A DNA stretch of 64,000 nucleotides, from positions 55,490,001-55,554,000 of the forward strand of contig NC_088855.1 in NCBI RefSeq assembly GCF_963853765.1, read 5' to 3'. A program made the position numbers and the translations under genes. The notes beneath the pieces were generated by a model, which made no database searches, had not been told where the DNA came from, and saw only the letters and a program-made list of their open reading frames with translations. Of the stretch, positions 7,035 to 51,510 are shown in pieces (the stretch's first letter is position 1; every line of letters begins with the position of its first letter). The DNA comes from Magallana gigas. Lineage: Eukaryota.

Positions 7035-8330
7035 TCGATACATTTGAACAACCCGCGACGTGAGCCGTTGACAATCTCTCAGGGACTCAAATTGGACTGT
7101 ATTCATGAGTATGGAGACCAATAAAAAGTAGGTGTTAGATTTACCGGTATTCCAGTTACATAGCCCATTAAATTTATTGCGGCAGGGGGTCCAGGGCTTA
7201 GCCCTTGTGATAAGTTCAGGGGTGCGAAGCCCCCCTACGAAAAATAAATTTGGGAGTTTAAGAATGTGAAAAAAAAACATTGTCCGGAACGAAGTTTTGT
7301 TATTTTTCATTTCAGATCAGCATCTATTCACAGTATTGTCGTATACAAATTTTTGATTTATAAGAAATTCAAAAATTGAGAACACGATTGTCGTATACTC
7401 AATTTTTGAATTCTTTATAATTCAAAAATGTGTAAACAACAGTATTTAATAAAATAAAACTTTTAACGTATTTTAGATGAATGAACATTTTTATTTTAAT
7501 CGTTGTTTAACTTTAAAATTTCAATGGCCCGATTGGGCATTTTTTGGAGTTTGCAAATTTTGTGAGAATATTGTCAACTGAGACCATTTGGTGCCTTTGA
7601 ACAAAAAGTAAGGCAAGGCCAACCAGACGGTCCCCAATGTTTCAAGCGTCTCATTGTGGAGATCTCTCGCAAGGGAGCAAATCAACAAAGTGTTGGGCCT
7701 TAGCTGCGAAAAATTATTTTGAATTTGAGTATTATAATTGAGTGATTTATATGTGTTTCTTCTGTAATTAAAGTACCTGATGCCGATTCTAGACTGTCGT
7801 TCTTCCTTTTTCTTTATAAACGATGTAAGCTTTGTTTGGTTTTTTTTCTTCTGATCCATATTTTCCCACATAAACAACTCTAAGATTTTATTGGATCAAG
7901 AGTCCCATCTGATAAATTTTGATCCCGATCACATTGAAATGGAAGTATAATATCAAAATTTTTATTTATTGGATTTGTTTATTTCTTAAATTTACAAAAG
8001 AGAGAAATTCTACTATGTGGGAGGGAAAATCCCGTTGATGATCAAAAAAATTCTAGTGAGGCAGTTGCCTCATTGCCACAATGGAAGCTACGCCCCTGCA
8101 TAGAAATATATTGAAATTAGATAACATTTTTAAAAAACTAAAACATACATACATGTATGTGGATTTTGTTTATAAAAAAGAAAATGAAAATATCGTACTT
8201 AAAATTACAAGTTGAATATGATGGGTGATATGTTGACAACCTTTCCTCTTTATGTATACAGTATATTTTAATAGTTTCAATGATTTTAACGGATTTCTGG
8301 CAGGTGACTTAGACAACTCCCTCCTAAAAC

Positions 8331-47909: not shown

Positions 47910-48554
47910 CTACTCTTTAAACATCCGTCTTAATTTGCTGATGTAGTCTTTGAAGGTTTCAAATGCCCTGTATGCTGTCAGGCAATATTGCGCCACTATT
48001 CCTATGCACAATAAAAGTCCATTTGCGTTCATTGCCTGATAAGAGTAAGAACATCCACGGAGTGTCCAGGACACAAAACTGTCACAGTTATTATGAAACA
48101 CCGAATATTGTCTCTCCCCAAGACGTTTTCCCGCCCTACTAACGGCTTCGGACTTTTCCCTCGGTGTCTTTGGATAATTCTCGCCCATCACTAGATACAC
48201 CCCGCCATTAAAATCCAAAACCTCGTCAATGTCTGCAAAGTCTACAGATTCTTGAATAATCTCGGCGACTCCTTTTAACATAATGATCCGCGATATCGCT
48301 TTAAGCGCGTAATGGATGATGGTGAGTTTGTTTTCAGCGGCTTCGGTCACTAGAATGTGATGGTCATAGCTGTAATTAAACGTCCACCACAGAATTCTGA
48401 GAGCACGGGGTCTGTGGGCACGAATGTGAGACGCAGTGCCTATCTTCCCGCTCCGAATCGACTGTATTAAATGCTGCAAATCATTGACACGTTCTTCAGA
48501 GTAATTTTCCACCGTATGAATTCCTTTTGCTAATTTTTCACAATCGCAAGACAT
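47910..48554 (-). CDS. Intronless LRAT/PLAAT-like (permuted NlpC/P60) protein, paralog A, 214 aa
   Basis: YDHHILV...TIIHYA...YSVFHNNCDSFVSW supplies the His, His and Cys catalytic positions of the LRAT fold. Hydrophobic C-terminal segment GLLLCIGIVAQYCL. TATA and GC boxes upstream. Confidence 0.85.
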   Translation of the reverse strand: MSCDCEKLAKGIHTVENYSEERVNDLQHLIQSIRSGKIGTASHIRAHRPRALRILWWTFNYSYDHHILVTEAAENKLTIIHYALKAISRIIMLKGVAEIIQESVDFADIDEVLDFNGGVYLVMGENYPKTPREKSEAVSRAGKRLGERQYSVFHNNCDSFVSWTLRGCSYSYQAMNANGLLLCIGIVAQYCLTAYRAFETFKDYISKLRRMFKE

Positions 48555-48656: not shown

Positions 48657-49618
48657 ATTTAGGAAGAGGAAAACAATTTCCGTGCTAAGATTGACGCTGT
48701 TTACGTAAAATCCAAGAGCGCAATACATTTAAGTGCATATACACTGCCTGGTTCCAAAGTTTCAATAAAATTTTAAATTGTAATAGCCACCGACTTCTTT
48801 TTTAATTCAATAAACAATGGGAAAACGACAATAATATATATTATACATCAGGAACAACGTCTTCACACTGTATCATAGTCACTAGTATTGACGACAGTTT
48901 TGTTTGTATACTAGGGCAATCTGTGTTAAACTTTAAAACATCATAAGGAGATGAGCAAATCTTCAACGTTTCTTTTGTGTGAAATTGTGTGTTTTGTGTT
49001 AATCAATAGCACAAGTTTTAAACTATAAAACATTTTTTTAATCAAAGGGTAAACACTTTTGGGTAGAGGGTAAGCAGCTGCACGTTCTTTGGAATTTGTT
49101 GCTTTTTTGGTGTAAAGTTGCTTAGGTTTTATCTATATCGTGATAAAAATTCGATGTATGCGCTCGTTAACTCTTTGTAAATATCAATGGTGTAGTTTGC
49201 AATCGTTTATTGGAGTACAATGTATTTGTGTTGGAACCATGTGCATCGTTGCTTTGGTTTTATCATTCTATATGTAAGATATTCTGATAAAAAAATTCAA
49301 ATTGTTGTCAATTTAAGCATGATTTATTTTATTCTTGCCTGTATAATTTCAGTTGAGCACAAAGCATTGCGTAATGCGTTGAAGAAGGCGTATTTTTTCT
49401 AAACGTTCGCGGCTGGTAAAGGACTATAGATCATTATCTTGAAAAAAAGTAACTATAATTGTACCCGTGTCATGTTTATGTTGCAGTTTGTTTTTACGGG
49501 CGCCGATCATACGCATCAATATCACTTCAGAGTGCGTTTTATCCTCGAGGAAATGCGTCTTTGTTTTGTGCAGATGTTTGAATGATTCTAGGCTAAATGG
49601 TTAATGCTTAATAAGAAT

Positions 49619-50745
49619 GTGTGAAAATTAGCGACATCAATCAACCAGACTTGTAAGGGATTTATTAGGACCCGACACTCCAAACCACAAAGATAGTGTA
49701 ATGTTTTGCAAAAAAGCAAATTGCAATTTAAAATATGCAAGTATGAAAATTAGCGACATCAATCAACCAGACTTGTAAGGGATTTATTAGGACCCTGTGT
49801 GAAAATTAGCGACATTTTTTATAACAAGACGACATCAATCAACCAAACTTGTTGTAAATTTATTAAGACCCGACACTCTAGACCACATTATGAGTACACG
49901 TTATACACTGATATTGTTATTATGGATGCATAGAGTGTTTCGGCGGTTTTTGTAAGAGTTATGGTTTTAACTCTTAAGGCCCGCCTCATCAGGGGTCTAC
50001 CTATTATGATTTTCTCATTATTGTAATCGTGATTGAATTATCATTTCGCCGATATTCTTGTGTTTACTGTAGGCGATTATAGGTTCATTGGTAAAAAGTT
50101 CTTTGCATATTTCATCATTTTTAAGGACATTCCAGTATTTCAGGATGCGCTTTTTGAGACCCTTCAAGTGTGGGTTGTACTTGGTTATCATGACATTTGG
50201 TTGTCGTTGTTTGCATTTTATATCTGTTTTCACCAAGTACTTCTTTCTATTTGTGTTTTCCATTGTACGTACAATGGGATCTATTTCCTTATCAGAGTAA
50301 CCTCTCTTTGATAGGTGTGTCTTGAAATCCGTTAGAATTGTAGATAGAATGCAAGGATTACTGGTATTCCTTGTATGTCTGATGCATTCGCCTTTTATGA
50401 ACCCTTTAAAGACAGAAGGACTATGGGTGCTTTTTCTGTGTAGATATTGAAAATTGTTTGTTGGTTTTATATATGATTTAATATCAAGTATGTTATTTTC
50501 CTGAAACCTCACGCCTTTGTATATAGTAGTGTCCAGAAAATTGACACTTTTTTCTGAGATTTCATACGTGAATTTCAGGTGTTCGTGACATGTATTGCCG
50601 ATGTCTAAAAATTCTAAAATTTCATTTTGTGTGCCGTCAAAGGCTATAAAACCATCGTCTCTAAATCGCCCGTGGTAAAGAACTTGATTGGCGAATTTGA
50701 ATTTTGACATTATATAGTTGGTGATTTGATACATTCTTGTATCTG
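49619..50745 (-). mobile_element. 5'-truncated Penelope-like retroelement: RT C-terminal part plus 3' pLTR-like repeats
   Basis: ORF 50018-50734 reads GRFRDDGF...VNFLDTTIYK...KPTNNFQYLHRKSTHS..VFKGFIKGE.IR..RN. No GIY-YIG nuclease is seen. Downstream lie a hammerhead motif and 3-4 partial ~60-bp direct repeats (49619-49880). Confidence 0.85.
49866..49998 (-). ncRNA. Type I hammerhead ribozyme
   Basis: Minus strand: stem I AGACCC; CUGAUGA; stem II GGCGG...CCGCC; GAAA; stem III ACACUCUA...UAGAGUGU; C (GUC triplet, cleavage 3' of 49872); stem I' GGGUCU. Confidence 0.85.
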
Positions 50746-51510
50746 AAAACGTACAAACTCTAGATCTTCAAATAGCGTCATCTGGACCACTCTAGCTAAC
50801 TCTGGACACCTTACAATGTAAAACCAGATTAAACAAGACATGTTTTTGTCTATCTGTAAATCCATTCGCAATATTCATTTTTTCTCTCGAACGTTTGTAT
50901 CAGGCAATTTGCGCAAATCTACAAGATGAGCAGATAAACACATACTCCTGGTCTCTCTTTTAGCACGTTTTTAATCTTATAGATGTATCATGTATTTATC
51001 TTATAGGTCAGAGGCAAGGTACATTATTATTTATATGATAAAATCTCGATAAATGAGTCTTTCAAAGTCAATCAAGAATTTCATTTAATAAATAAGAAAA
51101 AAATAAATAAACGTAAAATGCCATATAAAATTGTGAATGTGTTTAAAGCTTTGTAAATTGTTTAATAATTGGAAATAAAGAAAGTGACAGGAAAAGAGAG
51201 AAGGAGCAAAATAACGTGATCAGGACTATCGTAAGGATCACCTATTTAACACCTATTTAACACTTTATCCTATATTTTACATTTCAAATACCTAAATATT
51301 TCATTATTTTAACTCTAACGATATACCACAAACCACAAAATGCATTATCAGCTTCACCTATGTATAGTTTTTGTGCATTATTAATTTGACTCTAGCAGAT
51401 TGTCTTTAATCAAATAAGAGAGATGGGTCTTACTCGTAACATAAAATGCATGCCTAGCTAATTACGCAAATAGCTTGGAAACTGGAAGCTTTTACATTGT
51501 GTAATATTGG

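What the first reader, a model, noticed from the sequence alone, without database searches (positions are those of the whole stretch)
49866..49998. Complete type I hammerhead ribozyme at the 3' end of a Penelope-like element, with expanded stems II and III
Every core nucleotide is present on the minus strand: CUGAUGA, G10.1-C11.1, GAAA and a GUC cleavage triplet. Stems are 6 bp (I), 5 bp (II) and 8 bp (III). Stem II carries a 34-nt insert with its own 9-bp hairpin (UAAGAGUUA/UAACUCUUA) and stem III closes a 50-nt loop, larger than minimal Penelope hammerheads. It starts 20 nt after the RT stop codon. Hammerheads in Penelope pLTRs are established; this architecture and its activity are untested. 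It lies ~1.3 kb upstream of, and on the same strand as, LRAT-like paralog A, so it could cut read-through transcripts.
Basis: partly seen in the sequence, partly recalled or inferred. Interest (0 to 1): 0.7.

Follow-up and report, generated by a model that had tools for sequence, protein, structure and literature searches.

The report
Hammerhead ribozyme of oyster Penelope-like retroelement
A complete self-cutting hammerhead RNA motif sits at the end of a broken copy of a Penelope-like jumping gene, and other copies in the same genome begin exactly at its predicted cut, so the ribozyme very likely works in the animal; it is a good new example of a known association.

Summary
On the minus strand, 49998-49866 holds every hammerhead core nucleotide, stems of 6, 5 and 8 bp, a 34-nt stem II insert and a 50-nt loop III. 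It is also the minimum-free-energy fold.

The motif lies in a 932-bp, 5'-truncated copy (50748-49817) that is 99.6% identical to a 3,625-bp element. That element carries ORF1 and an endonuclease-less RT ORF2, and forms tandem arrays in this 564-Mb genome, probably an oyster's.

- **Conservation:** a covariance model finds at least 92 relatives in several diverged subfamilies. Leaving aside visibly decayed copies, the CUGANGA box varies only at the free position N7, and six stem pairs show compensatory changes. The stem II insert and loop III vary freely.
- **Rfam:** it detects none of these motifs.
- **Cleavage in vivo:** of 96 complete 3' tails in the genome, 11 begin exactly at the predicted cut. 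One is a 56-nt insertion with a 14-bp target duplication. These are the best available sign of cleavage in vivo.
- **Not obtained:** RNA reads could not be fetched, and nothing supports an effect on the LRAT-like gene 1.3 kb downstream.

Earlier reports of this scan described the same element family on other DNA. Verdict: real, very likely active, and a new member of a known kind.

The parts
49866..49998 (-). Complete type I hammerhead ribozyme motif of 133 nt. Stem I is 49998-49993 with 49871-49866. CUGAUGA is 49992-49986. Stem II is 49985-49981 with 49946-49942. G12 A13 A14 are 49941-49939. Stem III is 49938-49931 with 49880-49873. C17 is at 49872, so the predicted cut is 49872|49871.
   Evidence: Sequence read. 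The MFE fold equals the hammerhead junction. The family covariance model R1 scores it 169.6 bits, the same as the master copies.
49947..49980 (-). 34-nt insert capping stem II, with the 9-bp hairpin UAAGAGUUA/UAACUCUUA. It is a peripheral part that varies between subfamilies.
   Evidence: In other subfamilies the stem II cap ranges from about 9 to about 45 nt with a different sequence.
49881..49930 (-). 50-nt loop III, variable between subfamilies. It contains the 32-nt unit that has expanded into a minisatellite in decayed copies elsewhere in the genome.
49817..49871 (-). 55-nt 3' tail of the element, running from the predicted cut site to the element's 3' end. AATAAA is at 49864-49859.
   Evidence: Independent insertions all end at master position about 7345-7350, which is about +55 after the cut.
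49817..50748 (-). 932-bp, 5'-truncated copy of the 3,625-bp Penelope-like element, 99.6% identical to the tandem master copies.
   Evidence: BLAST against L037.
50018..50734 (-). Remnant of ORF2: the C-terminal 238 codons of the 643-aa endonuclease-less RT, with the stop at 50020-50018.
   Evidence: Homologues of the full ORF2 carry PF00078, PF28514 and PF26215.
49741..49795 (-). Tail of a second subfamily (GGGUCCUAAUAAAUCCC...) that starts exactly at the hammerhead cut position, with no ribozyme upstream of it.
49610..49740 (-). Very short 5'-truncated copy of the second subfamily: part of loop III, the stem III 3' strand, GUC and the tail.
   Evidence: compared with the intact subfamily copies L101 and L103.
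47910..48554 (-). Neighbouring LRAT-like ORF. It is context only and not part of the element.
   Evidence: Pfam PF04970 LRAT, 35.8 bits, E = 1.1e-8.

Best explanation
This is the cis-acting hammerhead ribozyme of a young Penelope-like retroelement (PLE) family. The full element is 3.6 kb and has four parts: ORF1, an RT ORF2 without endonuclease, the hammerhead 19 nt after the stop codon, and a 55-nt tail carrying AAUAAA.

**Shown:**
- The RNA can fold on its own, as a monomer, into three helices around the canonical core.
- The predicted cut is after C17, between 49872 and 49871.
- The core and the junction helices are conserved across diverged subfamilies.
- DNA copies exist that begin exactly at G1.1.

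**Inferred:**
- Element transcripts self-cleave in the germ line. This releases a 3' fragment of about 56 nt that the RT can still copy and insert, alone or as tail-to-tail concatemers made by template jumping.
- Most insertions, including the window copy, span the cut site, so they were copied from uncleaved RNA. Cleavage is therefore partial, and is not required for insertion.
- What cleavage does for the element remains open. It may separate tandem or read-through transcripts, remove the tail, or partition RNA between translation and reverse transcription.

The window copy is a dead fragment with an intact ribozyme. It would cut any transcript that runs through it on the minus strand, but no host role is indicated.
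For: - **Motif and fold:** the motif is exact. The MFE fold is the hammerhead, z = -4.1. All 19 core pairs form with probability 0.55 in isolation and 0.24-0.60 with up to 100 nt of upstream context.
- **Element identity:** the copy is 99.6% identical to the tandem units in L037, which hold ORF1 of 255 aa and ORF2 of 643 aa. ORF2 homologues are about 640-aa bivalve proteins with precomputed RVT_1, PF28514 and PF26215.
- **Family size:** model R1 finds at least 92 matches in the genome, including several subfamilies.
- **Core conservation:** in the 27-sequence alignment A2, and leaving aside visibly decayed copies, the CUGANGA box varies only at N7 (U, A or C), GAAA is kept in every row, and GUC is kept in all but two rows, L031 and L076, which read GUU.
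- **Covariation:** 91.6% of cells are paired against 24-43% when partners are slid. Six pairs have changes on both sides, reached by 1 of 500 shuffles. Four of six subfamily representatives fold to the same junction as their MFE.
- **Cut-site fossils:** there are 96 complete tails and 0 in the reversed control. Of the 17 not preceded by GTGTC, all of which were inspected, 11 begin exactly at G1.1, in three subfamilies. They include a 56-nt insertion with the 14-bp target duplication TCATATGTTTATCC (L089) and a run of three successive cut-site-start tails with different junction fillers (L105). Poisson p is below 1e-11 even if 0.5 ends per site were expected.
- **Literature:** hammerheads are a known PLE feature, and monomeric forms with a large helix III are known in endonuclease-less PLEs (PMC4209133).
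Against: - No hammerhead model of Rfam 15 matches this copy or five other subfamily representatives, even at E <= 10.
- With long flanks the active fold is a minority of the equilibrium ensemble, 0.01-0.11. With 60-nt flanks on both sides the MFE is an alternative fold, although the centroid is the hammerhead.
- No loop-loop tertiary contact typical of fast natural hammerheads can be recognised.
- Covariation rests on few independent events, and A2 was aligned to the model.
- A transcription start at the same nucleotide would also explain copies that begin at G1.1.
- In a related PLE, hammerhead cleavage was dispensable for insertion in vitro, and no RNA-seq ends were seen at the cut (PMC11167929).
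Confidence: 0.85

Rival explanations
1. The motif is a real hammerhead by descent, but it is catalytically weak or inactive in vivo. On this view the copies that begin at G1.1 come from a transcription start site, or from an RT stop at that nucleotide, and not from self-cleavage.
For: Minimal PLE hammerheads cleave poorly in vitro (PMC4209133). In the anole PLE no RNA-seq ends map to the cut, and catalytic mutants insert normally (PMC11167929). There is no recognisable tertiary contact and no Rfam match. In long context the active fold is a minority.
Against: The 5' ends coincide to the nucleotide with a position predicted beforehand from the ribozyme model, in three subfamilies whose surrounding sequence differs. 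Among non-decayed copies the CUGANGA box changes only at N7, and the stems show compensatory changes, which indicates selection on catalytic competence. Unlike minimal PLE hammerheads, this one has a stable 8-bp helix III. That matches the fungal PLE hammerhead that cleaves as a monomer at 1.97 per min in 10 mM Mg2+ (PMC4209133).
Confidence: 0.1
2. The ribozyme copy in this window has been taken over by the host. It would process or silence read-through transcription into the LRAT-like gene 1.3 kb downstream on the same strand.
For: Only geometry: same strand and 1.3 kb upstream. The ribozyme is intact, scoring 169.6 bits like the master copies.
Against: The copy is 99.6% identical to active-looking masters, so it is a very recent insertion and has not been conserved at this place. 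It is one of dozens of equivalent fragments. An AATAAA follows the cut directly. No expression data could be obtained.
Confidence: 0.03
3. The match is a chance resemblance to the hammerhead consensus in AT-rich repeat DNA.
For: No Rfam hit. Short core motifs such as CUGAUGA and GAAA are common by chance.
Against: All core positions and three helices are in the correct order. The MFE fold has z = -4.1. The position after the RT stop is fixed across the inspected subfamilies, and the core is conserved with covariation across subfamilies that are only 73-75% identical.
Confidence: 0.02

Closest known systems
Hammerheads of endonuclease-deficient PLEs of fungi and protists (Coprina-type; the Serpula lacrymans hammerhead in Cervera & de la Pena 2014, PMC4209133)
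   Same: Type I motif in the terminal repeat region of an RT-only PLE. It has a long, stable helix III, helices I and II of variable size, and no recognisable loop-loop tertiary contact, and it is expected to act as a single motif. The fungal one cleaves as a monomer.
   Different: The host is an animal, probably an oyster. The element sits inside chromosomes in tandem arrays, and no telomeric repeats are seen at its 3' end. Helix II carries a 34-nt insert with its own hairpin, and loop III is 50 nt. Activity was not measured.
Minimal hammerheads of metazoan EN+ Penelope-like elements (min-HHR; PMC4209133). Breaker-lab work describing dimeric PLE hammerheads is recalled from memory and was not read here.
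   Same: Same core, same type I topology, and the same association with the PLE terminal region.
   Different: The metazoan min-HHRs have no helix III, or one of 1-2 bp, and must dimerise. This one has an 8-bp helix III and folds alone.
Non-LTR retrozymes of animals (Cervera & de la Pena 2020, PMC7229834; Li et al. 2026 preprint, 10.64898/2026.07.22.740005)
   Same: Type I hammerheads in tandem repeats in invertebrates, including bivalves, and thought to derive from or depend on PLEs.
   Different: Retrozymes are non-coding repeats of 170-400 nt that give circular RNAs. Here the unit is a 3.6-kb coding element, and the short derivatives found, the 56-nt tails, lack the ribozyme.
PAc (Poseidon) PLE of Anolis (Frangieh et al. 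2024, PMC11167929)
   Same: PLE with a hammerhead, a 3' tail signature and tandem copies. Uncleaved RNA is the main insertion template, as it is for the window copy, which spans the cut.
   Different: PAc has a GIY-YIG endonuclease, its hammerhead overlaps the ORF start, and no RNA ends were seen at its cut. Here DNA copies begin exactly at the cut.

Membership tests
Hammerhead ribozyme, type I | Conserved core: C3 U4 G5 A6 N7 G8 A9, G12 A13 A14, the A15.1-U16.1 pair, and H17 not G | tested here: met
   CUGAUGA at 49992-49986, GAA at 49941-49939, A15.1 at 49938 paired with U16.1 at 49873, and C17 at 49872. Among non-decayed copies of other subfamilies the CUGANGA box varies only at N7.
Hammerhead ribozyme, type I | Three helices meet at the core, with helix I open (5' and 3' ends in helix I) and helices II and III closed | tested here: met
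   The MFE fold shows it. In A2, 91.6% of stem cells are paired and 6 pairs have compensatory changes. Four of six subfamily representatives fold the same way.
Hammerhead ribozyme, type I | Match to a curated hammerhead covariance model in Rfam. This is a detection criterion, not a structural definition. | tested here: not met
   No hammerhead hit at gathering score or at E <= 10. The most likely reason is the long inserts in helix II and loop III.
Hammerhead ribozyme, type I | Site-specific self-cleavage 3' of H17, giving 2',3'-cyclic phosphate and 5'-OH ends | not testable with these tools
   Support is indirect only: 11 of 96 complete tails in the genome begin exactly at G1.1.
Penelope-like element (PLE) | RT of the PLE/TERT-related clade with the PLE-type N-terminal region | tested here: inconclusive
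   The local Pfam copy gives no hit, and the PDB profile search gives nothing significant. Homologues carry precomputed PF00078, PF28514 and PF26215, and protein-atlas neighbours have the same set. A FRDDGF motif is present. No phylogeny with named PLE clades was possible.
Penelope-like element (PLE) | GIY-YIG endonuclease fused to the RT (canonical EN+ PLEs) | tested here: not met
   ORF2 ends at ...IIQSRLQ*, 19 nt before the hammerhead. The 3,625-bp unit has no other ORF of 60 aa or more apart from ORF1, one small ORF overlapping its start, and two short antisense ORFs. GIY-YIG is readily found elsewhere in this genome, with at least 150 matches. The element therefore belongs with EN-less PLEs.
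Penelope-like element (PLE) | Insertion signature: frequent 5' truncation, head-to-tail partial tandems (pLTR), head-to-head copies, a short tail, and a hammerhead in the terminal region | tested here: met
   Tandem arrays with a 3,623-3,625-bp period, each led by a truncated copy. Truncation points are random. All copies share a common 3' end at about +55. Inverted pairs occur in L001/L005 and L102.
Metazoan minimal PLE hammerhead (dimeric) | Helix III absent or 1-2 bp with a palindromic loop, so that two copies must pair to be active | tested here: not met
   Helix III is 8 bp with a 50-nt loop, and the motif folds alone.
Non-LTR retrozyme | Short non-coding tandem repeat of about 170-400 nt, each unit carrying a type I hammerhead | tested here: not met
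   The unit is 3,625 bp with two ORFs. The short tandem units found are 55-57-nt tails without a ribozyme.

The most novel reading that the evidence does not exclude
The hammerhead of this endonuclease-less animal PLE cleaves in the germ line, and the released 56-nt 3' fragment is by itself a sufficient template for reverse transcription and chromosomal insertion. Two observations point this way: a 56-nt insertion with a 14-bp target duplication, and tail-to-tail concatemers with untemplated junction bases. If true, this would be the first genomic record of in vivo cleavage by a PLE hammerhead. It would also map the RT recognition element to the last 56 nt and give a handle on the long-open question of what hammerheads do for PLEs.
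Probability: 0.5. Interest if true: 0.65.

Novelty: new member of a known kind. Interest (0 to 1): 0.45.

Why it matters
Hammerheads are a hallmark of Penelope-like elements, but their role is unsettled. Craig et al. 2021 (PMC8557442) call the function unclear. Frangieh et al. 2024 (PMC11167929) found cleavage dispensable in vitro and saw no RNA ends at the cut.

This oyster family offers a monomer-type ribozyme that should be easy to assay. It has young, nearly identical tandem masters. The genome itself holds DNA copies that start at the predicted cut, so the link between cleavage and retrotransposition can be tested directly.

It also shows that Rfam-based annotation misses a whole family of animal hammerheads because of long peripheral inserts. 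For the host locus, the LRAT-like gene, nothing special is indicated.

Tried and rejected
- **Rfam:** searches at gathering score and at E <= 10, on the window and on five other subfamily loci, gave no hammerhead.
- **Protein identification of ORF2:** the local Pfam copy gave nothing for the ORF2 remnant or the full ORF2. Longer relatives gave only sub-threshold RVT_1. PDB searches with the sequence and with a profile gave nothing significant.
- **Covariation among young copies:** in family A alone it is nearly uninformative, with one real compensatory pair. Diverged subfamilies were needed.
- **L090:** I first counted L090 as a copy starting at the cut. BLAST extends it about 10 nt upstream, so I dropped it.
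- **Cleavage defining full-length 5' ends:** I considered that cleavage at an upstream tandem unit defines the 5' end of full-length copies. In the subfamily whose tail starts GGGUCCUAAUAAUUC ('family C' in the full report), five copies begin right after the tail end instead, so this is not supported as a general rule.
- **Slippage origin of tail arrays:** rejected, because the junction bases differ between units and tails of different subfamilies are joined.

Full report
**1. The observation**

On the minus strand, 49998-49866 reads as follows:
- AGACCC, then CUGAUGA, then GGCGG
- a 34-nt insert
- CCGCC, then GAA
- ACACUCUA, a 50-nt loop, then UAGAGUGU
- C, then GGGUCU

Every invariant hammerhead position is present: C3 to A9, G12 to A14, the A15.1-U16.1 pair and C17. 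G10.1-C11.1 is also present.

The stop codon of the upstream ORF is at 50020-50018, 19 nt before the motif. The unconstrained MFE structure of the 133 nt is exactly the three-way junction, at -39 kcal/mol with z = -4.1.

The probability that all 19 junction pairs form together depends on context:

| Context | Probability |
|---|---|
| 133 nt alone | 0.55 |
| up to 100 nt of upstream sequence | 0.24-0.60 |
| longer flanks | 0.01-0.11 |

With 60-nt flanks on both sides the MFE is an alternative fold, while the centroid is the hammerhead.

No Rfam 15 hammerhead model matches, at gathering score or at E <= 10. The same holds for five other subfamily members.

**2. What it belongs to**

The stretch 50748-49817 (minus strand) is 99.6% identical over 932 bp to units of a tandem array on another chromosome, held as L037. 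One unit is 3,625 bp and contains:
- ORF1, 255 aa
- ORF2, 643 aa
- the hammerhead, 19 nt after the ORF2 stop
- a tail of about 55 nt with AATAAA directly after stem I

The window copy is thus a young, 5'-truncated fragment with an intact ribozyme. It scores 169.6 bits with the family model, the same as the masters.

ORF2 has no hit in the local Pfam copy. Its homologues are mostly about 640-aa proteins, and the named ones come from bivalves (Saccostrea, Pinctada, Mytilus, Argopecten). They carry precomputed RVT_1, PF28514 and PF26215, and protein-atlas neighbours show the same set.

ORF2 ends at ...IIQSRLQ*. The three longer relatives whose sequences were read also end at the equivalent ...LVRAKL or ...LVKAKL, so they too lack an endonuclease. 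The unit has no room for a GIY-YIG domain, although GIY-YIG is abundant elsewhere in the genome.

The remaining PLE signatures are present:
- tandem arrays led by a truncated copy
- random 5' truncation points
- a common 3' end
- inverted pairs

The host is probably an oyster, judged from the best protein hits and from this scan's earlier notes. I did not verify that.

**3. Conservation**

Copies of the same family are too young to say much. There is one compensatory pair.

A covariance model built from them (R1) finds at least 92 matches in the genome, including several diverged subfamilies, some in their own tandem arrays. In the 27-sequence alignment A2, leaving aside visibly decayed copies:
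- The CUGANGA box changes only at N7 (U, A or C), the one position that is free in hammerheads.
- GAAA is kept in every row, and GUC in all but two rows (L031 and L076 read GUU).
- The A15.1-U16.1 pair is invariant.
- Stem I shows A-U to G-C and G-C to A-U switches.
- Stem II shows C-G to U-A and G-C to A-U switches.
- The distal pair of stem III switches A-U to U-A.

Overall, 91.6% of cells are paired, against 24-43% when partners are slid by 1-3 columns. Six pairs have changes on both sides, a count reached by 1 of 500 shuffles. Two caveats apply: A2 was fitted to the model, and the events are few.

The stem II cap (about 9 to 45 nt) and loop III (about 20 to 80 nt) differ freely. So the 'expanded' parts are peripheral and are not themselves conserved. 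Four of six subfamily representatives fold to the junction as their MFE. The two that do not are visibly decayed copies.

**4. Evidence for cleavage in vivo**

RNA reads could not be obtained. I therefore asked whether DNA copies record the cut.

A pattern for the complete tail finds 96 copies, against 0 for the reversed control. The same tail preceded by GTGTC accounts for 79 of the 96. I inspected all 17 exceptions:

| Class | Count | Copies |
|---|---|---|
| Point mutation in GTGTC, ribozyme present | 5 | L037b, L098, L099, L101, L104 |
| Diverged or truncated at about -10 | 1 | L090 |
| Begins exactly at G1.1 | 11 | listed below |

The 11 copies that begin exactly at G1.1 come from three subfamilies:
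- L089 is a 56-nt insertion flanked by the 14-bp duplication TCATATGTTTATCC.
- Window 49795 is one of them.
- L100, L094b, L103b and L093b each follow the 3' end of another copy. In at least L093b and window 49795 that copy belongs to a different subfamily.
- L102 holds two tails joined head-to-head at their 5' ends.
- L105 holds three tails in a row with junction fillers G, ATT and A.

Other short copies start at scattered positions in loop III, stem II or the tail. Even if 0.5 ends per site were expected, 11 at one site has p < 1e-11.

Slippage cannot explain the arrays, because the junctions differ and subfamilies are mixed. The simplest reading is that RNA fragments with a 5' end at the ribozyme cut exist in the germ line and are copied by the RT to their end.

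A transcription start at the same nucleotide is the rival. It would be a coincidence repeated in three subfamilies.

Most insertions, including the window copy, span the cut. They came from uncleaved RNA, in line with Frangieh et al. 2024 (PMC11167929).

Call the subfamily whose tail starts GGGUCCUAAUAAUUC (for example L079 and L105) family C. In family C, five copies begin just after the tail end. Cleavage therefore does not generally define the 5' end of full-length copies.

**5. Comparison with what is known**

- Hammerheads in PLE terminal repeats are established. Metazoan ones are minimal and are thought to work as dimers.
- Endonuclease-less PLEs of fungi and protists carry type I variants with a large helix III that cleave as monomers (PMC4209133).
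- Loss of the endonuclease within animal PLE lineages has been noted before, for example MjPLE01 of a shrimp (PMC8557442).
- No paper in the held library describes this oyster ribozyme.

The present motif works like the monomeric fungal and protist type, but it sits in an animal, intrachromosomal, EN-less PLE. It is a new member of a known kind.

Earlier reports of this scan (s1-388627, s1-388582, s1-395837) described the same family on other DNA and reported RNA read ends at the cut. I could not repeat that. My genomic census is an independent line of evidence that agrees with it.

**6. The host-gene idea**

The LRAT-like ORF (48554-47910) is confirmed by Pfam and lies 1.3 kb downstream on the same strand. 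Nothing else links it to the ribozyme. The insertion is very recent, it is one of many, and it is followed by AATAAA.

**7. Limits**

- Activity was not measured.
- There were no RNA data.
- There was no RT phylogeny.

Noticed in passing
window 49610-49816 (minus strand): Directly downstream of the element's 3' end lie three more head-to-tail PLE end pieces of a second subfamily. They are a 21-nt tail end (49816-49796), a full tail starting at the cut site (49795-49741), and a truncated copy made of part of loop III, the stem III 3' strand, GUC and the tail (49740-49610). This looks like repeated insertion at one spot or template jumping.
   Followed up: partly
L035:1649-2029, L036:1500-1931, L029:1501-2721 (repeat array about 2032-2590), L030:1501-1870, L025:1439-1627: A 32-nt unit of loop III (CAUAAUAACAAUAUCAGUGUAUAACGUGUACU), bounded by the direct repeat CAUAAU, has expanded into minisatellites of 2 to more than 10 units in older copies whose cores are mutated. 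This stretches loop III to several hundred nt.
   Followed up: partly
L105 (G000:C10:24869558-24870160) and L102 (G000:C5:56468918-56469298): L105 holds an array of four consecutive 55-57-nt tails: the first follows a hammerhead, and the next three each start at the cut site, with junction fillers G, ATT and A. L102 holds two tails joined head-to-head at the cut site with AAT between them.
   Followed up: yes
L089 (G000:C3:28847146-28847550), insertion at 201-256: A stand-alone 56-nt insertion consisting only of the post-cleavage tail, flanked by a 14-bp target-site duplication. An endonuclease-less RT thus produced a staggered-break-type insertion inside a chromosome.
   Followed up: yes
Proteins P0109, P0118, P0119: Relatives of 831-856 aa are fusions of an ORF1-like N-terminal coiled-coil region with the RT. 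They also end at ...LVRAKL or ...LVKAKL without an endonuclease, so the EN-less architecture is shared by a broad clade (2,040 hits at E <= 1e-5; the named ones are from bivalves).
   Followed up: no
G000:C8:50096591-50105303: In the subfamily with the short stem II cap (L079 type), body start and hammerhead are only 1,922 nt apart, and units are separated by spacers of 0, about 930 or about 1,400 nt. This may be a shorter, possibly non-autonomous, derivative.
   Followed up: no
whole genome: At least 150 GIY-YIG matches lie in open frames of up to about 1,020 aa, often as inverted pairs a few kb apart. These are presumably EN+ PLEs (Naiad or other clades) living alongside the EN-less family.
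   Followed up: no
L098 and L099 (G000:C1:52846134-52846422 and C1:56539846-56540134): Two loci 3.7 Mb apart are identical over the whole 289 bp fetched, including the non-element flanks. This indicates a segmental duplication or an assembly duplicate.
   Followed up: no
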